From NCBI RefSeq assembly GCF_000143415.4, contig NW_003314262.1, positions 2,301,046 to 2,365,045 of the forward strand: 64,000 bases of DNA, in the 5' to 3' direction. This stretch comes from Selaginella moellendorffii. Its lineage: Eukaryota; Plantae; Lycopodiophyta. Each line of letters begins with the position of its first letter. Positions within the stretch are counted from its first letter, which is position 1. The translations under genes and the position numbers were made by a program. The notes under the pieces are model-generated. The model did no database searches. It saw only the letters and a program-made list of their open reading frames with translations, and was not told the origin of the DNA. Shown in pieces: positions 1,182-11,114 of the stretch.

Positions 1182-2326
1182 ATGGCGGAGCATCTCGCCT
1201 CCATCTTCGGCACAGAGAAGGATCGCGTTAACTGCCCCTTCTATTTCAAGATCGGCGCTTGCCGCCATGGCGACCGCTGCTCCAGGCTCCACAACAAGCC
1301 CACAATCAGCCCCACGCTGCTGCTCTCGAATATGTACCAGAGGCCGGATATGGCGACGCCGGGGATGGATCTGAATGGGCAGACGATGGATCAGAAGAAA
1401 ATCCAGGAGCATTTTGAGGTACTGGAGTGGTTTCTTGAGATTTGATTTGTGGGTCTCAATTTTTTCTTTTTTCGCTTGGCAGGACTTTTACGAGGATATG
1501 TTTGAGGAGCTCAGCAAGTATGGGGAGATTGAAAGCCTCAATGTGTGCGACAATCTTGCAGACCATATGGTAAGCCTTGTGTTTCTCATTTTTATTCTGA
1601 TGCTTTGTTTTTTTGTTTTTTGTTTTTTTTCGTTGTTTTCTTCGTTGCTTCCTTTCAGGTTGGAAATGTGTATGTGCAATTTAGGGAGGAGGAAGAAGCT
1701 GCTGCGGCTCTGAAGGCACTATCAGGACGTTTCTATGCAGGTTTGCGTGTTCCTCTTCTCTCCTGTTTTTTCAAAAATATTTTTCTTTGCAGGTCGACCC
1801 ATCATCGTTGATTTTTCGCCTGTGACCGATTTTCGAGAAGCTACATGTCGTCAGTACGAAGAAAACACTTGTAACCGTGGAGGCTACTGCAACTTCATGC
1901 ACTTGCGACGCATTGGAAGGTCTGTTCATCCAAAAACTGTTTTTTATTTTCTGACTCCTGTTCTTGTGACATTGTCTTTGCTGCAGAGAGTTACGGAGGC
2001 GGCTGTTTGGAGGCTACAGAAGACGAGGAGGACGCAGCAGAAGCCGCAGCATGAGTCCTCGCAGGCAAGACGACCGTCGCCACTACGACGATCGGCGACG
2101 GAGGTACGATGATCGAGGAGGTAACTACGATCATCACAGCAGGTACGATCGACCGCGGAGGCGAGATGGCAGCCGCAGCCGCAGTCCTCGATCGCGCGGC
2201 GGCCGGGAAGGCAGCGTGGAGAGGCGAGCCAGGATCGAGCAATGGAACAGGGAGCGAGAGGAGCACGGCGGAGGAGGCGCTGGCGGCGAAGCGAATGGAA
2301 ACCAGCTTCCATACGGCGCCGAGTGA
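1182..2326 (+). CDS. U2AF35: U2 snRNP auxiliary factor small subunit (U2AF35), 5 coding exons
   Basis: [37 protein letters not shown] (CCCH1); UHM ([29 protein letters not shown]|VGNVYVQF); CCCH2 ([19 protein letters not shown]); RS/RD-rich tail with [13 protein letters not shown]. Confidence 0.98.
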
Positions 2327-3139
2327 ATCGCAACGCTCTCTGGTTGGTTTCTCTTGAAAATCCTTCCTTTCCTTCATGCAGGTGGCATCAAACATAGCTC
2401 ACAGATCTCCACTCTGTGCAGGTGTGCAGGGCACCACCTTGATGTGCAAAACTTTTGGATTTTTTGCTTGCTTGGTCTTGCCTGTTCTTCCCTCTCTCCC
2501 GGTTTTTTCTTTGTTCTTCCGGGCTTTTTCCATTCCCGAGCAGGCCTTTTTTTTGCTTTCTTCTACTTGGTCCCTGCATTGCTGCTTGCCTTTGCATTCT
2601 CTCCAGGTTGATACTAACATCACAGGAGTTTTTTTTATAGCTGCTGCCTGTCTCTCAGGTATCCTTTTTTTTGTGGTCTTCCTCGTTTTTTTTTCCCTCG
2701 TCTCCAAAGTTTTCTTGAAGCGTGCAGGTTTTTCAGGGTGATACTCTCATGTGTAAAAAATGTGTAGGTGAGAGAGAGCATTTGGAGCTAATGCGGTTTT
2801 CGTGTATACAGGTTGATTGGTTTCACGCAGAAAGGCGTCGTGAAGAACAAGCACGAGAAAAAAAAAAGAGCTGTGCGGGCTGCTTATGTAAAACAAAACT
2901 ATGGTTTGATTAATAGGAACGCTAATACCGTGGTTGGTATATTTGATTCTTCGTATATTCTGTCTCGTGGCATTTTCCGGCTGTGGGACGTTATGTTCTT
3001 GGAATATGCCTGCTGTGAAGCGTGCAAGTCATTAGGAGAGCTATGGACGAATGGCTGTGCGAGTTTTCAAGGAGGGCAGGCTTTAGGTCTTTTTGGATGA
3101 TTTTACAATACTCGCGGTCCCAATCGTCCGGGCTCGCGG

Positions 3140-3147
3140 GCGGGAAA
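3140..3147 (-). promoter_or_regulatory. E2F consensus TTTCCCGC upstream of the first multi-RRM-like gene
   Basis: GCGGGAAA on the + strand, about 120 bp upstream of ATG 3268. An 8-mer match can arise by chance. Confidence 0.35.
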
Positions 3148-3267
3148 GAGAGGTATCTTGGAATGTTTGCTCGCGGCGACGAAAATCTTCGAGAATCCAC
3201 TGCGATCGCGCGATCGAGGGGATCGAGGTAGTTCTTGCGCGATCGAGGTATCGAGGTACAGATTTTC

Positions 3268-5709
3268 ATGCTCGCATTCCAGAAGAGGCTGGAGAGGCTT
3301 GCGGCGGGCACAGATCCTCGCGAGCCGGATGCTTTGGCAGCGGAAGCGCCGATATTTCGAGAGGAGGAGCGATCTTACTGTCTCATCGTGCGCGGGATCT
3401 CCAAGAAGGACACTTGCCCCGAAGATTTGCAGCGGCTCGCCGACGGCATTCTCCGGGAGAGCTTTCGATTCTTCCCGCCCTGTGACGAATTCGTGGAGAA
3501 GGTTTTCTACTGCTTGCATGTCGATGGAGACATGGGCATCCTGGTGTTCTCCTCGGAGCTCATGGCGGAGCTTCTCTTCTTCGCGTGCTGCGACGAGACG
3601 ATCTCGCCTTTCTCCATCGCCGGCAAGAGGTTCTCGCTGGAGAGGATCTACGATCGGTCAGGAGAGCAGTGCCGAATGATCGAGGATTTCCTGGCGGAAA
3701 CAGCAGCGGCAGGGCCAGTCCCAGCGTCCAAGTTCGTTTTTCTAGCCGGAGTTCCACGGAAATGGGAGGACGCGGACAAGCTCGAAAGATACTTCAATGG
3801 GTTCTTTCCATTCAAGGTTGTGACATCTGTCCGGGTCTTTCCAGGGGCCACGTATCTCGAGTGTACGTCCAAGGCAGCCATTGACAGGCTCTTCTTTCGG
3901 TGCGAGCAAGACGCGAGGATCGTGACGGACATTGGCCAGGAGGTTGTGATTTGCTCCGGGAAGATTTTGCCGCTGTGGAGAGTGGTCCCAGATCGGAGGA
4001 GCCAGTCGAGTGACGCATCAGCAGAAGAGCAAGAGGTTGTTTTCGAAGAGAAGAGGAAAACTTTGGACGATGCTTGCGCTACGGAGACAGTGACGAGCAC
4101 TCCGGCGGGGAAGCGGCATGAAGTTGCAATCTCAACTAGCGAAAAGGTGACAGTGCAACTCAAGGATCTGGAAAAACAAGTTGACAAGGCAGGAGCTCCA
4201 GCGGCAAGGACGTCAACTCCTCAAGTTGAGCAGCAAGGCGAAGCTTTGCGTTCGCCCGAGGAGATTATCCGAAACGTGCTCATCGATGACTCCATGATGG
4301 AATGCGGAACTCCATCTCCCCGAGCGACAGGTCCGAGCTGCCGTCAAGTAGTTTGGGAGCCGCCAACGCACAGTGGCCGCCGGGTCGTGTGGGAAGAAGC
4401 AGTTCCGCCAGAAATGCAAAGACAGAGACGAGAATTCAGGCTCAGGCAATGCGGGCTAGTAATCGGAGGACTTACCAGGGAGAAGTTCGACTTGGAGCGA
4501 GTGGCATACCATTTCTCGAGCTTGCTTCGAAAGTTCCAGCTCCACAGCGATGCAGAACCGGAGGTTTCATGGAGATCTCCGAAAGAGGCGGTAGTCGCCT
4601 TTGCTTCCGAGAACACCGTGGATCGCCTTCTGGACAACTACATCCAGTTCCCGGAGGAGTTTTACTTGAACAACTCGAGGTTCTGGTTGTCTCGACCGGA
4701 AGGCTACCATCGACCAGGCGCGATTTACAGAGAAGGCAACCTGACAACCGATGGCAAAGCCGTCACCTTCGACGGAGTAGGCGTCCACTTGCACCGCGAG
4801 CAACTCAAAGGAGCTCTCGTGGAGGCCGTGGAGAAGATGCTCCTTAAACACGGGGTGGTGGAGAAAGGCAAGCCTCTCTTCAAGAGCTTCACGAACTTCG
4901 AGACCAAGGCTGTGGCGGTACTGGACGAGGTGGTGGCCAACGCTCTCGTCTCAGCCTGCGTCGGCTTGACAGTGGCTCGGCGGCCTCTCTCCATCTACAC
5001 TTCCAAAGACCAGGTGACTTTGTTCGTGGCCGAGCTCCCGGAGGCCGTCGGCAACACTCTCGACAAGCTCGGGCAGCTGCTCGCGTCGGGGCTGGCGAAG
5101 ATGAGCGTCGACCACCGCAGCGCCATCGAGCGGATCGAGTGGTCGGGTCGCAGCGTGGCCAGGGTGACACTGCGCAGCGAGGCCGCCGCGGACGCGCTCA
5201 TGAGCGCCTACGTCAACTTCACGCTCGACTTCTGCGTGTCGGACATGCCGCTGGTGATCTTCCGCCACGAGCGCTACGTCCGGCCTGGAGCAACTTACAG
5301 GAAGAGGGACAGGACGATCGATCTAGATCTTCCGCCGGGCTGGGGCGATGATCATCAGCAACCAGAGCTGTGGCAAGTTCACGTCGCGGGGATTTTCCCG
5401 GCGCTGGATCCCATCCCGCTCATGGGGGCCGTGAACGAGCTGCTGGAGACGGCGCTGGCGAAGCATGGCATCCTGGAGCGGGGCGAGAGGCCTTTCAAGC
5501 GGTTCTACTGGCAGAAGGGGAGCGAACTTGCGAGCTTGATCGTGGAGGAGGACGTCGCCGCCAAGCTGGTGGACGTCAAAGGATTGACGCTGGCCGGGCA
5601 CCACATTTCCTTCTATGATGCCACGGTTTTTCGCGATGGCCACCAGGAAGGAGAAGAAGGATCTCCTCGTAGAACTGGAGGCTGGATCGAAGAAGAGGAA
5701 GAAAACTGA
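3268..5709 (+). CDS. Uncharacterised intronless protein (~813 aa) with six degenerate RRM-like modules; paralog 1
   Basis: Open frame of 2.4 kb, first ATG at 3268; an upstream exon spliced to the AG at 3281-3282 cannot be excluded. RNP2-like module starts LIVRGI, VFLAGVP, LVIGGL, VTFDGV, LFVAELP, VHVAGI. Clear paralog at 6374-8908. Confidence 0.85.
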   Translation: MLAFQKRLERLAAGTDPREPDALAAEAPIFREEERSYCLIVRGISKKDTCPEDLQRLADGILRESFRFFPPCDEFVEKVFYCLHVDGDMGILVFSSELMAELLFFACCDETISPFSIAGKRFSLERIYDRSGEQCRMIEDFLAETAAAGPVPASKFVFLAGVPRKWEDADKLERYFNGFFPFKVVTSVRVFPGATYLECTSKAAIDRLFFRCEQDARIVTDIGQEVVICSGKILPLWRVVPDRRSQSSDASAEEQEVVFEEKRKTLDDACATETVTSTPAGKRHEVAISTSEKVTVQLKDLEKQVDKAGAPAARTSTPQVEQQGEALRSPEEIIRNVLIDDSMMECGTPSPRATGPSCRQVVWEPPTHSGRRVVWEEAVPPEMQRQRREFRLRQCGLVIGGLTREKFDLERVAYHFSSLLRKFQLHSDAEPEVSWRSPKEAVVAFASENTVDRLLDNYIQFPEEFYLNNSRFWLSRPEGYHRPGAIYREGNLTTDGKAVTFDGVGVHLHREQLKGALVEAVEKMLLKHGVVEKGKPLFKSFTNFETKAVAVLDEVVANALVSACVGLTVARRPLSIYTSKDQVTLFVAELPEAVGNTLDKLGQLLASGLAKMSVDHRSAIERIEWSGRSVARVTLRSEAAADALMSAYVNFTLDFCVSDMPLVIFRHERYVRPGATYRKRDRTIDLDLPPGWGDDHQQPELWQVHVAGIFPALDPIPLMGAVNELLETALAKHGILERGERPFKRFYWQKGSELASLIVEEDVAAKLVDVKGLTLAGHHISFYDATVFRDGHQEGEEGSPRRTGGWIEEEEEN

Positions 5710-5713
5710 AAGC

Positions 5714-5845
5714 GAATATCCTACCCAAACGCAGGGAATATTCTGCTGCTTGAGCAGGGAAAGAATATTCTATTAGGTCTAAGGATATTCCGCGGCCGGA
5801 CTATGTCAAGAGAGGATATTCTGTCTAAAACTAAGGGGGATATGC
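5714..5845. promoter_or_regulatory. Cluster of six GNATATNC (P1BS/PHR1-type) motifs
   Basis: GAATATCC 5714, GAATATTC 5736, GAATATTC 5763, GGATATTC 5783, GGATATTC 5814, GGATATGC 5838. Confidence 0.6.
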
Positions 5846-6373
5846 CGTTGCCGTAGATGTCTGCATCACCAAGATTCCTTCCCGGCTATGCTATGGAGAA
5901 AGATGGCACGGTATAGCTGTGAGGGCTTCCCATTTTGCGTGTCGTTAGTTTTACATTGAAATGCCGCTAGGTACCACGGACGCGCCGCGCCAGCGACAAC
6001 CGAATGGCGGAGGTTTCTTCTTCCCGTCCAAGAATGCCGCCGCTGCCGCCTAGCGTCCGCCGCGAGCGGCGATTCCAGGCGCGGCGGATCAGCAGCGCCG
6101 GGCCTCCAGGTGAAAATCCCCGCCGGGAATCGGCGTTCTTGCGTTCTTTCTCTCACGATCGCGATCGGGGAGTGGCAGTTCTTGGAGCGGCGGATGGACA
6201 TCGGCGCCCGGCGGCAGTGCTTGCGCGATCGTCGTAATCCGGGGAGAGGGCGAAATATTTCCGATCGTCAAGGTAACTTGGTCTTCCAGTTCCTAGCTAG
6301 AACCAAACGCTTGGAAAGCCGGCGCTGATTCCGAAAGATTCACAGATTTCCAAGCGCAGGCCCGCCAGCGGCG

Positions 6374-8908
6374 ATGCCTGATTTGCCCAAGGCGGTAGCA
6401 GCCAGATTTTTCGAGCCGGCGGCGACAGCTCAAGCACCAGATTTTTTCCCCGGGCCAGCGATCAAGGAGCGCTCCTACTCTCTCGTGGTGCGCGGGCTGT
6501 CAAAGAAGCACACTTGCCCCGAGGCTTTGCAGGAGCTCGCCGACGACATTCTTCGCAAGCGCTTCCGGTTCTTCCCGCCCTGTGACGATTTTGTGGAGAA
6601 GGTGTTCTACTGTTTGCATGTCGAGGGCGACATGGCCATCCTGGTGTTCTACACGGAGCTCATGGCCGAGCTGCTCTTCCAGGTCTGTCGCGACGAGACG
6701 AGCTCGCCTTTCTCCATCGCCGGGAAGAGGTTTGCGCTGGAAAGGCTCTACACAGCGAACAGGCAGTTTGAGGGGCATGGAAACAACGTGGTAAACGCAG
6801 TACGATCTCTGGAGGCGTCGTCAAAGTTTGTGTACCTCAGTGGTCTTCCTCCAAGTTGGGAGGACGGGGACAAGCTAGAAGCCCACTTTAGTGGGGTCTT
6901 GAACAGAGACTTGACATCAAAGGTGGTGGGTTCTGTCCACGTTTTCCCAGCGGCAGCGTATGTCGAATTCACAGACAGAGCAGCAGTTGAGAAGCTTTTC
7001 TACAGTTGCAAGCTGGATGGAAGCATCACGTCAGACATCGATCAGAACTTGGTGATCTGCTGTGGTGTCAGGACTCTACCACTGTCGCAAGAGCCTTTCC
7101 AAGTTTCCGAGGAGAGTGATGTCTCGCCAGCAAGTCAACAATGCCGCCAGAGAACTGCGAGAAACCTTGAAGAGCGAGGCTGGGAGAAAACAGGAAATGA
7201 GAATAGCTTTGAACAACAAATCCGGGAGGAAACAGAGAAGCTGAGTAGCGTTCAACAGCAGGAAAGCCCAGGCGGTTTGAGATCAAAGAACACAAAGGTG
7301 CGAGACTGTCCATCGATGCAGAGTGAGAGTAGCCTTGAACAACAGGGAAGACAGAAGGGGAGTAACCTTGAGCAACAAAACCGGGAGGAACCAGATAAGC
7401 TGAGTAGCGTTCAACAACAGGAAAGCCCAACGAAGACAAAGAACACAAAGGTGCGAGACCGTCCATCGACGGAGAAGCAGCGTTCCGTGCGATTCGATTT
7501 AGGACATGCAGCACAAGGCAAACAGCAAGATAGAGTTCCGGAGGCAAGACCCTTAGCTCGTGTTACATCCAACATTGACCGCCAAGTTCAACACATGCAA
7601 GGACATTCTGGGGCTGGACAAAGACAAGTGGCTGAGAGGGGCCTTCACCAAGTGTCCATCATGCTTGGGGGGTTCCAAAGAGAAACGTTCGACTCTGAAC
7701 AGTTGAAGAAGCTGCTCGTCGGTCTCTTTCGAAAGCACAAGAATTATACAAGTGAAGCGGACCTGAAATTCCAGGTGAAGTGGGATGCTGCAGCGGATGG
7801 AGGGCGGGTAATATTCTCTTCCGAGGATATGGCCAACCGTCTCATGGAAATTTATGTCCGGGCTACAGAAGAGTTCTCCTTGGATGACTTGAAGTTCTCG
7901 TTGTTTCGCCCAGAAGGTTACCAGCGACCTCGTGCGGCGTACAAGACCGGTGCATCATCAAGCATCTACAAAGTGCTGCAATTCGACGGGTGTCGAGTTT
8001 GCCCGGTTGCCGAGAGACAGTTCAGATGTGCACTGGCCGAGGCCCTGGCGACGGTGCTTTTGAGAACCAGCGTGCTGGAAGAAGGCAAGCCTCCTTTCAG
8101 AGACGTGCTTTTCAGGGAGGGCTGCTGCTTTGCAATACTCGAAGAGCAGGCTGCGAGCGCTCTGATGAGCAGCAAGGACAGGTTGTTTGTGGCTGGCCGG
8201 GTCCTGAGGCCATTCCAGCCTCACGCGCAGACAACTCTTTTCATCGTCAACTTGCCGACTGAAACTTCCCGTTATGATCCTACCAAGCTCAGGATGCTGC
8301 TGCGGAAGGGGATGAAGAAGTTGCAACCAGAAAAAAGCGTGGCAGATTGCATCACGAGGATAAGCTGGGTGGGGCAAGAGCCCAAGGCACTAGTCTTTCT
8401 TCAATCGGATGCTGATGCGGATGCACTAATGTCCGCTTATATCAGATTCACGCGAGAATTCTGCCACAAGGAGCTGCCCCTGACACTACACAGGCCTCCC
8501 ACTTACATTTGGCCGGGAGCAGTCTATAGGCCCAAGAATTTCATGTCGGGCACCAGCACCTGCGTTTTGAACTTCACTGGATTCCCGCTGACGCTGGATT
8601 CGAGGGCCCTATCGGGAGCAGTGTGCGAACTCGTGGTTAGAGCGGTTCTTGGCGAAGGCGTGCTGGAGGAATTCCAAAGGGCTGTGAAGAAGTTTTTCTG
8701 GAAAAATCGGACCCCCGTCGCCGAAATCACGGTTGACGAGCTTGTTGCGGAAAAGCTGGTGGCAGCCAAAGGATTGGTTCTGGCCGAGTCTAATGTGAGG
8801 TTCTACAGACGTAAAGCACCATCGCTGGGGATCCAAGTCCAGGAACTGGCACGAACAGGAACAGGGGGGTGGATCGAAGAGGAGGAGGAAGAAGGCGAAG
8901 TGAGGTGA
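6374..8908 (+). CDS. Uncharacterised intronless protein (844 aa) with six degenerate RRM-like modules; paralog 2
   Basis: Open frame of 2.5 kb, colinear with 3268-5709. Shares FRFFPPCDxFVEKVFYCLHV, FRPEGYxRP, ADALMSAY, KGLxLA and the C-terminal GGWIEEEEE. Confidence 0.88.
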   Translation: MPDLPKAVAARFFEPAATAQAPDFFPGPAIKERSYSLVVRGLSKKHTCPEALQELADDILRKRFRFFPPCDDFVEKVFYCLHVEGDMAILVFYTELMAELLFQVCRDETSSPFSIAGKRFALERLYTANRQFEGHGNNVVNAVRSLEASSKFVYLSGLPPSWEDGDKLEAHFSGVLNRDLTSKVVGSVHVFPAAAYVEFTDRAAVEKLFYSCKLDGSITSDIDQNLVICCGVRTLPLSQEPFQVSEESDVSPASQQCRQRTARNLEERGWEKTGNENSFEQQIREETEKLSSVQQQESPGGLRSKNTKVRDCPSMQSESSLEQQGRQKGSNLEQQNREEPDKLSSVQQQESPTKTKNTKVRDRPSTEKQRSVRFDLGHAAQGKQQDRVPEARPLARVTSNIDRQVQHMQGHSGAGQRQVAERGLHQVSIMLGGFQRETFDSEQLKKLLVGLFRKHKNYTSEADLKFQVKWDAAADGGRVIFSSEDMANRLMEIYVRATEEFSLDDLKFSLFRPEGYQRPRAAYKTGASSSIYKVLQFDGCRVCPVAERQFRCALAEALATVLLRTSVLEEGKPPFRDVLFREGCCFAILEEQAASALMSSKDRLFVAGRVLRPFQPHAQTTLFIVNLPTETSRYDPTKLRMLLRKGMKKLQPEKSVADCITRISWVGQEPKALVFLQSDADADALMSAYIRFTREFCHKELPLTLHRPPTYIWPGAVYRPKNFMSGTSTCVLNFTGFPLTLDSRALSGAVCELVVRAVLGEGVLEEFQRAVKKFFWKNRTPVAEITVDELVAEKLVAAKGLVLAESNVRFYRRKAPSLGIQVQELARTGTGGWIEEEEEEGEVR
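7201..7471 (+). repeat. Internal direct duplication (~115 bp x2) in the linker of paralog 2
   Basis: 7201-7318 vs 7360-7471: gaacaacaaatccgggaggaaacagagaagctgagtagcgttcaacagcaggaaagccca...aagaacacaaaggtgcgagac repeats with few substitutions. Confidence 0.9.
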
Positions 8909-9027
8909 AGGAATGCCCGTTTCGAAAAGACCGAGATGAAGAACTCGTACTCGACGTTTTTGCCACACATTTACACTTACAAGCTCAGCCGTGGAGCTCA
9001 ACCAGCTCGACAAAGTTTTTTCGCCTC

Positions 9028-11114
9028 TCAGCCTACGGGGATGGCTGGCTTCGCACCAGTAAGCTTCTTCAGCAGGACTTCCGAGTATCCTGGAGAGTAG
9101 TAGTGGACAATCTCCACCGGGTAGACGCTGTTGATGAGGTCGATGCACTCGCGCAGCTCCGTGCCCGGCTCGGCTGCCAGGTTCTGGAGCTTCTCAAAGC
9201 CGCCCGACGTCACGAACTTGGCTCTGGCATCACTATCCGCGGCCAACACCTTCGCGAGAGAGCCAAGGACGTACTTGAGTATACCTTCAGGCAGCATTGG
9301 TCCCTGTGACAAAGCCCCGACAGTCTCTCAGCGAAGAAGCTCAAAGAACAAGATGGACGTACCTGTAGCAGCGAATCCAGAGCGGGGAGGTGACTAAGAC
9401 GGTCCGAGAGGTTCTTGAGAGCTTTCTTGCACTTGGACTGGAGGTCCTCACTGCTGGTTTTTGACAGGAAGGTGGCGACCAGGTGTGGGAGCGCTCCGGC
9501 CTCGGCAACGGCAAGAGCGTGGACGGGGCCGTGCTTGCCGATCTGTCCCAGAGCCCATGCGGACGCGCTCTTGATGTGGTCTTCGTGCTCCTGGACGAGT
9601 GCACACACCATCGCCGCCACGCCGCCTGACGCGATGACCGAGCTGGACAGCATCTCGTCGAAGGCGCCAATGTAGCCGACAGCCATTATACCTGTACAGT
9701 CCCCGGCGTTGGTTACTTTGCGGGGAGAAAGGTGGCAGGAAACACAGGACAAAAGGAAAGGTGGCAGGAAACTGGACAGGAAAAAAAGAGAGTACCTGGC
9801 AAGCGCTCGTTGCCGAAAGTGTCCGAAATGTTTTCGATCAAGACGGAGAGTCCACCGGCGCCAACAACAAGCTGGGCGAGCGCTGCCGAGTGCTTGACGA
9901 CCTCGCGTATCAGAGTGGCTCCGTTTCTTCGGAGTTGGGGATCCTGGTCTTTCAAGCAGCCGAACATCTTGGGGAAGATCTCTTGCTCCACAACGGCCTA
10001 CAGTGCGACGAGCAACGATTAGAAACCAAATGAAGATCAGCGAGAGAAAGTGCTCGTGGCCAACCTCTGCTTGATCCTCGACGTGTCTGGCCAGCTGACT
10101 GAGCGCCAAGCAACCCTGGTAGACAAGGAGGTACGCAAATTTTACCAGCTTTGTTTGGACGAGAGAAACTTACCACACGTTTTACTCTGAAGTCATTGTG
10201 CGTGAGGAGCGCGGCAAGGTGTGGTGTAGCTCCAGCTTCGATCACAACTTGGGACAACTCCGGGGTATGTTTTGCTATTTCCGAGAGCGCTGTGCCTGCG
10301 GCTGTTCGCAGCGCAATCTCGGGTTCCTGATAAGTTCATGAGTTTCATCTTAGCAGGATGGAAGAGCTTTTACATACCTGGACGCAAAGAATGAGGAATC
10401 CAATCGCTCGAGCGTCCGCCACGGCCTGGGCGAGACGAGCGTTGTGCCTGGCGATGTTGGCCAGCGTCGAGGCGCCGGCCTCCTTGACGGATGGATCGAA
10501 TTCCTCGAGGCAATGCACCAGTGGCTCCAGAGCTCCAGACTCCACCACCGCCTGTGCCAGGGGCGCCGTGTGCTTGGCCACAGCTCGCAGGACATTCGCG
10601 GCGGCCTTCTTGTTGTGACGATTGATATCTCTGAGAGGTAAGAGGAGAGATGGACGATTCTTTTGGACAGAATTTTTTTGTATGGCGAGTTACCTGAGGG
10701 GGAATAGAACTTGCTGGAGGATTTTCTCTGTGACAAAAACCTCCGCTAGCTCTTCGCTGTAGTTTGCGAGCCGGGAGAGGCCCAGCGCTGCCAATTGCTG
10801 GATTTGTGGGATGCAATCCAGCAAGAGAGGTCGCAGCAGGACCAGAACACCGGCATTGTGGAGAATCTCCACGTTCTGCGATCACAAACAAGCACAGATC
10901 AAGCACGAGGAAGAAGAAAAAGGAATTCTTGGATCTCTATCATATCGAAAGATCTTGTTCCAGCTTACCTTGCATAGAGATTAAGCTGCGGTGTTCTTGG
11001 ATTTAGGCAGTATACCTGTGGCTTTAGAGCGAGCTCCGCGATCGTCCGGGCAAACAGCGTACGCGACTTTTGGAAGCTCTCAACGACCTGGAGAATCGAT
11101 CGTGCAGTCGCCAT
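9028..11114 (-). CDS. SPAG6: Sperm-associated antigen 6 / PF16 armadillo-repeat axonemal central-pair protein, multi-exon
   Basis: N-terminus MATARSILQVVESFQKSRTLFARTIAELALKPQ|..EILHNAGVLVLLRPLLLD; ARM repeats (AKHTAPLAQAVVESGALEPLVHCLEEFDPSVKE, EDHIKSASAWALGQIGKH); C-terminus INSVYPVEIVHYYSPGYSEVLL. Confidence 0.95.

What the first reader, a model, noticed from the sequence alone, without database searches (positions are those of the whole stretch)
3268..8908. Tandem pair of intronless six-module RRM-like proteins resembling U2AF65 RRM1, directly downstream of U2AF35
Seen: two co-oriented ORFs of about 2.5 kb with no introns in an intron-rich neighbourhood. Each has six modules of about 80-95 aa in a 2 + disordered linker + 4 layout. 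Modules 3-4 and 5-6 are an internal duplication (…RPEGYHRPGAIY vs …RHERYVRPGATY; LLKHGVVEKGKPLFK vs LAKHGILERGERPFK; GLTVA vs GLTLA). Established: U2AF65 RRM1 has an elongated helix 1 and ends DGIxFxGxxLKIRRPxDYxP. Inference: the long helix 1 and module ends such as FWLSRPEGYHRP, FSLFRPEGYQRP, LTLHRPPTYIWP and VKGLTLAGHHISF look like diverged copies of this RRM type. This would be a lineage-specific, possibly retroposed, multi-RRM family. Its position next to U2AF35, in a genome with 50-60 nt introns, raises the possibility of an undescribed accessory 3' splice-site factor.
Basis: partly seen in the sequence, partly recalled or inferred. Interest (0 to 1): 0.82.

Follow-up and report, generated by a model that had tools for sequence, protein, structure and literature searches.

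The report
Tandem six-RRM genes in spikemoss
Two neighbouring intron-free genes of the spikemoss Selaginella encode proteins built from six degenerate RNA-recognition-motif (RRM) folds; they belong to an unstudied family found only in mosses, lycophytes and ferns, and nothing ties them to the splicing gene next door.

Summary
Window 3268-5709 and 6374-8908 (+) are intact ORFs of 813 and 844 aa, 38% identical. Each has 2 modules, a disordered linker, then 4 modules. Modules 3-4 and 5-6 are an internal duplication (hhalign 98% and 97%). A U2AF35-type gene lies about 0.9 kb upstream.

The family is not Selaginella-specific. An exhaustive HMM search found only 15 representatives. The named ones come from Selaginella, Sphagnum and ferns, none from a seed plant. 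Relatives have four modules (A-D), canonical RNP motifs in A and C, and in mosses a WIYLD domain and a CCCH zinc finger. The window proteins lost these features and most RNP1 aromatics. They keep an R-x3-Y-x-R-P-G extension and a TGGW-acidic peptide shared with mosses.

A single-exon core is a family trait, so retroposition is not supported. U2AF35 adjacency is absent at three other family loci. Both ORFs are intact in both haplotypes, with dN/dS about 0.3-0.5 in the modules. Expression could not be tested. The pair is an uncharacterised multi-RRM family, probably RNA-binding or adaptor proteins, of modest interest.

The parts
3268..5709 (+). Gene 1 (p1): 813-aa intronless ORF with six RRM-fold modules
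   Evidence: ORF. 95% identical to SELMODRAFT_441437 on the other haplotype. dN/dS 0.46 between haplotypes.
3370..3657 (+). p1 module 1 (type A RRM fold; RNP1 aromatics lost)
3715..3987 (+). p1 module 2 (type B RRM fold; keeps F in beta1 and Y in beta3)
   Evidence: Best-conserved module across the family (HMM hits 1e-15 to 1e-7).
3988..4434 (+). p1 disordered linker (about 150 aa)
   Evidence: No module HMM hit. Aligns poorly with p2. dN/dS about 1 or above, on few counts.
4435..4734 (+). p1 module 3 (type C copy 1, ends in the R-x3-Y-x-R-P-G extension)
   Evidence: hhalign M3~M5 98%. Alignments A2 and A5.
4735..5007 (+). p1 module 4 (type D copy 1)
   Evidence: hhalign M4~M6 97%. Alignment A2.
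5008..5307 (+). p1 module 5 (type C copy 2; closest solved structure is U2AF65 RRM1)
5350..5637 (+). p1 module 6 (type D copy 2; 19-residue helix 1; no RNP aromatics in any family member)
   Evidence: Two-domain alignments to U2AF65 RRM1-2 cover model residues 3-217.
5674..5703 (+). p1 C-terminal TGGW-I-acidic peptide
   Evidence: Motif present in p1, p2 and the other haplotype, and shared with P0004 (organism not recorded; 51% identical to a Sphagnum protein, so probably a moss). Sphagnum P0057 carries a TGGW-L-acidic version.
6374..8908 (+). Gene 2 (p2): 844-aa intronless ORF, tandem paralogue of gene 1
   Evidence: An intact orthologous ORF, 96.4% identical, lies on the other haplotype at L003:13102-15609. 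dN/dS 0.49. The deposited model SELMODRAFT_403402 (P0002, 608 aa) departs from the open frame after residue 560.
6464..7090 (+). p2 modules 1-2 (types A and B)
   Evidence: Module HMM hits. Alignment A3.
7091..7636 (+). p2 disordered linker, holding a 159-nt direct duplication (7196-7322 / 7355-7475)
7637..8824 (+). p2 modules 3-6 (C, D, C, D)
   Evidence: Tree: the M3-4 copies of p1 and p2 pair (support 100/98) and the M5-6 copies pair (94/93).
8861..8893 (+). p2 TGGW-I-acidic peptide near the C-terminus
1182..2330 (+). Upstream neighbour: U2AF35-type gene (two CCCH fingers around an RRM-like domain, short introns). Context only, not part of the family.
   Evidence: exon pieces searched separately. 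(annotated 290-aa product with zf-CCCH + RRM_1 on the other haplotype).

Best explanation
The two ORFs are real, tandemly duplicated genes of Selaginella moellendorffii. They belong to an uncharacterised multi-RRM protein family found in mosses, lycophytes and ferns, with no seed-plant protein among the named hits.

Shown:
- The ancestral core has four RRM-fold modules (A, B, C, D).
- Module C carries a conserved post-beta4 extension (R-x3-Y-x-R-P-G-A-x-Y).
- Module D has a long conserved helix 1.
- Fern and moss members keep canonical RNP2/RNP1 aromatic residues in A and C.
- The full-length Sphagnum member P0057 adds an N-terminal WIYLD domain, a CCCH zinc finger between C and D, and a TGGW-acidic peptide; P0004 (organism not recorded, probably a moss) has the finger and the peptide.
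- The window proteins are derived. The C-D pair was duplicated internally before the tandem gene duplication, giving six modules. WIYLD and CCCH are absent, and the RNP1 aromatics of A and C are replaced. The C extension, the D helix and the TGGW-acidic peptide are retained.

Inferred:
- They act as RNA-associated scaffold or RNA-binding proteins. Binding would use non-canonical surfaces (the basic/aromatic C extension, and modules B and M5 that keep a beta1 aromatic) rather than the classical RNP platform.
- They dock to an unknown partner through the conserved TGGW-acidic peptide.
- The position behind U2AF35 is coincidental.
For: - Genes are real: long ORFs, both intact on both haplotypes. 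Between haplotypes dN/dS is 0.28-0.53 in the modules against about 0.9-1.9 in the linkers.
- Family and range: the exhaustive HMM search gave 15 representatives only. Named members come from Selaginella, Sphagnum, Ceratopteris, Pteridium and Adiantum.
- Four-module core and conserved motifs.
- RNP comparison.
- RRM_1 and zf-CCCH in P0004. WIYLD (33.6 bits, cutoff 27) and zf-CCCH in Sphagnum P0057.
- TGGW-acidic motif shared by p1, p2, P0004 and P0057.
- Order of duplications: tree.
- No conserved synteny with U2AF35.
Against: - No expression data for these two genes.
- RNA binding is inferred from fold and relatives only. The loss of RNP1 aromatics argues against classical binding, and language-model features point to degenerate protein-binding RRM types (PARP14, NMI), though only at lead level, score 0.85.
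- The between-haplotype dN/dS values rest on few substitutions (23-35 non-synonymous per gene).
- Modules B and D were never searched as single domains.
- The organisms of the Logan-only hits are unknown.
Confidence: 0.6

Rival explanations
1. One reading: the modules are diverged copies of U2AF65 RRM1, and the pair is an accessory 3' splice-site factor working with the neighbouring U2AF35.
For: U2AF65 RRM1 is the top structural match of the C-type module, by 1.3-1.8 Z and by about 10 more aligned residues, reaching into the extension. U2AF large-subunit entries head both Foldseek lists and the Atlas shape list. The family's invariant R and Y after beta4 fall where U2AF65 has its R-P-H-D-Y stretch; the U2AF65 numbering is from my own knowledge, not tested residue by residue. 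The U2AF35 adjacency is kept on both haplotypes.
Against: No sequence-level link to U2AF65 even at E 10. Module A is tied with many RRMs. Other tandem-RRM proteins score within a small factor of U2AF65. No RS domain, no ULM-type basic-Trp motif and no U2AF-like three-domain architecture are seen in the sequence. RNP1 aromatics are lost. U2AF35 is not a neighbour of the family gene at the Sphagnum locus or at two other Selaginella paralogue loci. Haplotype synteny says nothing about function.
Confidence: 0.06
2. Pure pseudo-RRM adaptor: the six modules no longer touch RNA and serve as protein-protein interaction domains (as in UHMs, PARP14 RRM repeats or NMI/IFI35 NIDs), with the TGGW-acidic peptide as a docking or autoinhibitory element.
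For: RNP1 aromatic positions are replaced in modules A, M3, M5 and in all D modules. Protein-language-model neighbours are PARP14-type RRMs, RBM43 and NMI, at score 0.81-0.85, lead level only. No Pfam RRM_1 hit for the window proteins. The high pTM of 0.80 suggests a fixed C-D didomain rather than beads on a string.
Against: Relatives keep canonical RNP motifs and a CCCH finger. The most conserved element is a basic/aromatic extension of the kind that contacts RNA in extended RRMs (own knowledge). Modules B and M5 keep the beta1 aromatic.
Confidence: 0.25
3. Decaying or non-functional ORFs: recent retrocopies, pseudogenes or transposon cargo.
For: Intronless; no Pfam hit; dN/dS of 0.46-0.49 over whole genes is only moderately low; no expression evidence obtained.
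Against: Both 2.4-2.5 kb frames are open on both haplotypes. The paralogues are old (dS about 1.4) yet collinear over six modules. The modules are more constrained than the linkers. The single-exon core is ancestral, seen in Sphagnum and other paralogues, and there is no poly(A) tract. No transposon domains were found, and the family is low-copy with orthologues in ferns and mosses.
Confidence: 0.04

Closest known systems
U2AF65 (U2AF2) RRM1-RRM2
   Different: No detectable sequence homology. The window proteins have no RS domain, ULM or UHM. They have six modules instead of three, and degenerate RNP1. The family has a different relative architecture (WIYLD, CCCH).
Canonical multi-RRM RNA-binding proteins (PABP, hnRNP A1, Sxl/HuR, DBHS proteins NONO/SFPQ, PTBP1)
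   Different: The window proteins lack the RNP1 aromatics and fall below Pfam RRM thresholds. The inter-domain packing is not matched by any known structure (TM under 0.45).
Degenerate RRM repeats of PARP14 / RBM43 / NMI-IFI35 (NID)
   Same: Arrays of RRM-like modules without RNP consensus. They are the nearest clusters by protein-language-model features (0.81-0.85).
   Different: They are animal proteins. The similarity is a lead only, with no alignment-based support, and no PARP or NID domains are present.
WIYLD-domain proteins (plant SUVR histone methyltransferases)
   Same: The Sphagnum full-length family member P0057 starts with a WIYLD domain (E 3e-8).
   Different: The window proteins have no WIYLD domain, and no SET domain occurs anywhere in the family. 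No paper combining WIYLD and RRM in one protein was found.

Membership tests
RRM superfamily (fold) | beta1-alpha1-beta2-beta3-alpha2-beta4 topology in each module | tested here: met
   DSSP strings of both models show this order for modules A, B, C and D.
RRM superfamily (fold) | Significant structural match to solved RRMs | tested here: met
Canonical RRM (Pfam RRM_1) | RNP2 and RNP1 consensus with aromatic residues on beta1 and beta3 | tested here: not met
   The window proteins have no RNP1 aromatics at positions 3 and 5 in A, M3, M5 or D; only B and M5 keep a beta1 aromatic. Fern and moss relatives meet the feature in A and C.
Canonical RRM (Pfam RRM_1) | Pfam RRM_1 hit above the gathering score | tested here: not met
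   No RRM family hit for p1 or p2 even at E 10. Relative P0004 reaches 23.2 bits against a cutoff of 20.7.
U2AF large subunit (U2AF65/Mud2) family | Sequence homology to U2AF65 RRMs | tested here: not met
   Profiles A2 and A5 do not recover any U2AF65 chain among PDB sequences at E <= 10.
U2AF large subunit (U2AF65/Mud2) family | RS domain, ULM, RRM1-RRM2-UHM architecture | tested here: not met
   Sequence inspection shows six modules, no RS-rich N-terminus and no basic-Trp ULM.
U2AF large subunit (U2AF65/Mud2) family | Module structurally closest to RRM1, including the extended helix 1 and the R-P-x-D-Y C-terminal extension | tested here: inconclusive
   The C-type module ranks U2AF65 RRM1 first by 1.3-1.8 Z. 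Module A is tied with other RRMs. The residue-level equivalence of the extension rests on range ends and remembered numbering.
UHM (U2AF homology motif) pseudo-RRM | R-x-F motif after helix 2, and an acidic helix 1 that binds a Trp ligand | not tested
   No R-x-F motif was noticed in alignments A2 and A3, but no dedicated test was made.
Processed retrogene | Intron-bearing parent gene, poly(A) remnant, flanking duplications | tested here: not met
   The core is a single exon also in Sphagnum and in Selaginella paralogues, and there is no poly(A) tract after either stop codon.
Unnamed four-module RRM family of mosses, lycophytes and ferns (WIYLD and CCCH in moss members) | Collinear A-B-C-D modules detected by HMM | tested here: met
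Unnamed four-module RRM family of mosses, lycophytes and ferns (WIYLD and CCCH in moss members) | Invariant R-x3-Y-x-R-P-G extension of module C and G-A-L-x-E-L helix of module D | tested here: met
   Invariant and near-invariant columns of A2 and A5.
Unnamed four-module RRM family of mosses, lycophytes and ferns (WIYLD and CCCH in moss members) | WIYLD domain and CCCH zinc finger | tested here: not met
   Absent from p1 and p2. Both present in Sphagnum P0057; P0004 has the CCCH finger only. These features vary within the family.

The most novel reading that the evidence does not exclude
The family (WIYLD, four RRM folds, CCCH finger, TGGW-acidic peptide) marks an RNA-linked regulatory pathway of seed-free land plants that seed plants lost. 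The Selaginella six-module pair would be a specialised offshoot. Its C-type modules, which descend from or converge on U2AF65 RRM1, would read pyrimidine-rich RNA through the conserved R-x3-Y-x-R-P-G extension.
Probability: 0.1. Interest if true: 0.6.

Novelty: new member of a known kind. Interest (0 to 1): 0.3.

Why it matters
The finding defines a protein family that Pfam does not cover and no paper describes. It is restricted to mosses, lycophytes and ferns, and it has a clear domain grammar and two strongly conserved short motifs. This gives a concrete target for work on RNA biology in seed-free plants, for example by knock-outs in Ceratopteris or mosses. It also corrects a deposited gene model: SELMODRAFT_403402 is truncated by a spurious intron. 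As it stands this is one more uncharacterised multi-RRM family, and the attractive link to 3' splice-site recognition is not supported.

Tried and rejected
- Plain BLAST self-comparison found no internal repeats; hhalign was needed.
- Pfam and PDB sequence searches of the whole proteins gave nothing usable.
- The word-index protein search with the whole p1 found only the other haplotype. With a full-length family alignment it returned only two Selaginella paralogues, because low-complexity words swamped it.
No reads were laid, so expression is untested. No place was reported as human-like.
- Exact-protein look-ups for p1, p2 and P0010 found nothing.
- Module-C-only profile against PDB: the top hits were spurious IsdH NEAT domains and weak PTBP1 matches, with no U2AF65.
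- Tandem Repeats Finder found nothing in 3000-9200.
- Paper searches by locus tags, by RRM/Selaginella/ferns terms, and by WIYLD+RRM found no description of the family.
- The transposon and retrogene readings were rejected (family distribution).
- The subfamily placement of p1 and p2 relative to the CCCH-type moss proteins stayed unresolved in the tree.

Full report
**Observation.** The window is Selaginella moellendorffii. The first ORF is 95% identical to SELMODRAFT_441437, which lies on the other assembled haplotype. One search shows two co-oriented uninterrupted ORFs: 3268-5709 (813 aa, here p1) and 6374-8908 (844 aa, p2). They align end to end at 38% identity, E 2e-147. Plain BLAST finds no internal repeats. 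Profile-profile comparison of the six modules gives M3~M5 at 98% probability, M4~M6 at 97% and M1~M3 at 47%. The gene about 0.9 kb upstream (about 1182-2330, +) has two CCCH fingers around an RRM-like piece (exon pieces were searched separately and the joined product was not built). On the other haplotype it is annotated with zf-CCCH + RRM_1. This is the U2AF small-subunit architecture.

**Are the genes real?** The other haplotype (L003) carries both ORFs intact. The 14-kb region is 97.2% identical in DNA, and the p2 orthologue is 96.4% identical in protein without stops. Nei-Gojobori dN/dS between haplotypes is 0.46 for p1 and 0.49 for p2. It is 0.28-0.53 in the folded parts and about 0.9-1.9 in the linkers, though each gene has only 23-35 non-synonymous differences. 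The two paralogues are old, with dS about 1.4 and dN/dS 0.41. The deposited model for p2 (P0002, 608 aa) leaves the open frame after residue 560. Collinearity with p1 and with the other haplotype shows that the uninterrupted 844-aa frame is the better model. Expression could not be tested. Exact-protein look-ups found no other assemblies.

**Fold.** Neither protein has a Pfam hit. I aligned the N-terminal pair (A3, 18 sequences) and the last pair (A2, 23 sequences) with relatives and predicted both structures:
- Modules 5-6: pLDDT 83.5, pTM 0.80.
- Modules 1-2: pLDDT 79.7, pTM 0.74.

All four modules show beta-alpha-beta-beta-alpha-beta order, with long first helices (15, 15 and 19 residues in A, C and D). 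Foldseek finds over 170 PDB matches at E<=0.001 for each model, and every match shown is an RRM protein.

At sequence level the A-B profile weakly hits RRM proteins (chloroplast cS22 at E 0.004 and many others). The C-D and C-only profiles never recover U2AF65 even at E 10. So the RRM fold is shown. A modest structural preference of the C-type module for U2AF65 RRM1 is also shown. A specific evolutionary link is not shown.

**Family.** An exhaustive HMM search of 1.84 billion representatives gave only 15 proteins at E<=0.001. Cluster look-ups and one further word search name the following:
- Selaginella paralogues (P0003/P0016, P0009/P0048, P0014).
- Sphagnum (two subfamilies, P0033 and P0057).
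- The ferns Ceratopteris, Pteridium and Adiantum.
- Unnamed transcript-sized Logan contigs.

No seed-plant protein appears among the named hits.

Module HMMs show a four-module core, A-B-C-D, in all relatives. The window proteins have an extra C-D pair. In a tree of C-D units, the M3-4 copies of p1 and p2 pair (support 100/98), the M5-6 copies pair (94/93), and all four join weakly (78/85). The internal duplication therefore preceded the tandem gene duplication. Placement relative to the other subfamilies is unresolved.

The most conserved elements are the post-beta4 extension of module C (invariant R, Y, P; near-invariant R, G, A) and helix 1 of module D (G-A-L-x-E-L).

**Relatives' extra features.**
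- P0004 (organism not recorded; 51% identical to a Sphagnum protein) has a Pfam RRM_1 hit and a CCCH finger between C and D.
- Sphagnum P0057 (2030 aa) has an N-terminal WIYLD domain (33.6 bits, cutoff 27) and the CCCH finger.
- The peptide T-G-G-W-I-acidic near the C-terminus of p1 and p2 recurs in P0004, and as T-G-G-W-L-acidic in P0057. It is a short linear motif kept between mosses and a lycophyte, with an unknown partner.

**RNP motifs.** Fern and moss members have canonical RNP2/RNP1 in module A (for example V-F-V-G-x-I and x-D-F-A-F-L-E-L) and in module C (K-D-Y-A-F-F-Q-F). Module B keeps one aromatic on each strand. Module D has none in any member. In p1 and p2 the RNP1 aromatics of A and of both C copies are replaced; only B and M5 keep a beta1 aromatic. 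Language-model neighbours are PARP14-type RRMs, RBM43 and NMI, at score 0.81-0.85, which is a lead only. The window proteins thus look like pseudo-RRM derivatives of an RNA-binding ancestor.

**Retroposition and synteny.** The family core is one exon in Sphagnum (residues 184-963 of P0033) and in the Selaginella paralogues P0048 (39-940) and P0016 (234-873). No poly(A) tract follows either stop codon. Being intronless is therefore an old family trait, not a sign of recent retroposition. U2AF35 is upstream on both haplotypes, but the neighbours of P0033, P0048 and P0016 are unrelated genes. Adjacency alone gives no functional link.

**Verdict.** The pair belongs to an undescribed multi-RRM family of seed-free land plants; no paper was found. 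The most likely role is an RNA-associated scaffold or binder that uses non-canonical surfaces and a conserved Trp-acidic docking peptide. A pure protein-adaptor role is the main rival. The splice-site-factor idea keeps about 6%.

Noticed in passing
window 5735-5822: Four GAAnnTTC-type palindromes (G-R-A-T-A-T-T-C-Y) lie within 90 nt, between the stop of gene 1 and the start of gene 2. The pattern has 13 strand-matches in the window against 3 expected, and none of 100 shuffles reached 13. The motif resembles heat-shock-element half-site pairs (own knowledge). This could be a promoter element of gene 2 or lie in the 3' UTR of gene 1. One more copy sits at 1034-1043, upstream of the U2AF35-type gene.
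   Followed up: partly
window 7196-7322 and 7355-7475: A direct duplication of about 125 nt, 159 nt apart and 87-92% identical, lies inside the disordered linker of gene 2. It gives two copies of a peptide of about 40 aa rich in Q, E and K.
   Followed up: partly
window 6374-8908 versus P0002 (SELMODRAFT_403402): The deposited 608-aa model follows the ORF to residue 560 and then switches frame, apparently through a predicted intron. The open 844-aa frame is conserved in the paralogue and on the other haplotype, so the deposited model is probably wrong.
   Followed up: yes
P0057 (Sphagnum fallax, 2030 aa), residues 6-60 and 1384-1408: The full-length moss member of the family combines a WIYLD domain, four RRM folds and a CCCH finger. 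I found no paper describing this domain combination.
   Followed up: partly
Fern homologues P0005, P0008, P0010, P0011, P0029 (N-terminal halves): Two strongly conserved N-terminal blocks lie upstream of module A. One is around L-E-T-L-L-P-D-E-P and the other around V-P-S-V-L-C-D-A-E-G-N-V-W-H. Neither has a Pfam match.
   Followed up: no
L007 (Selaginella GL377568.1), P0016 versus P0003/P0017: The 873-aa model P0016 appears to fuse an upstream 194-aa gene product (P0017/P0018) to the family gene. The other haplotype annotates them separately.
   Followed up: no
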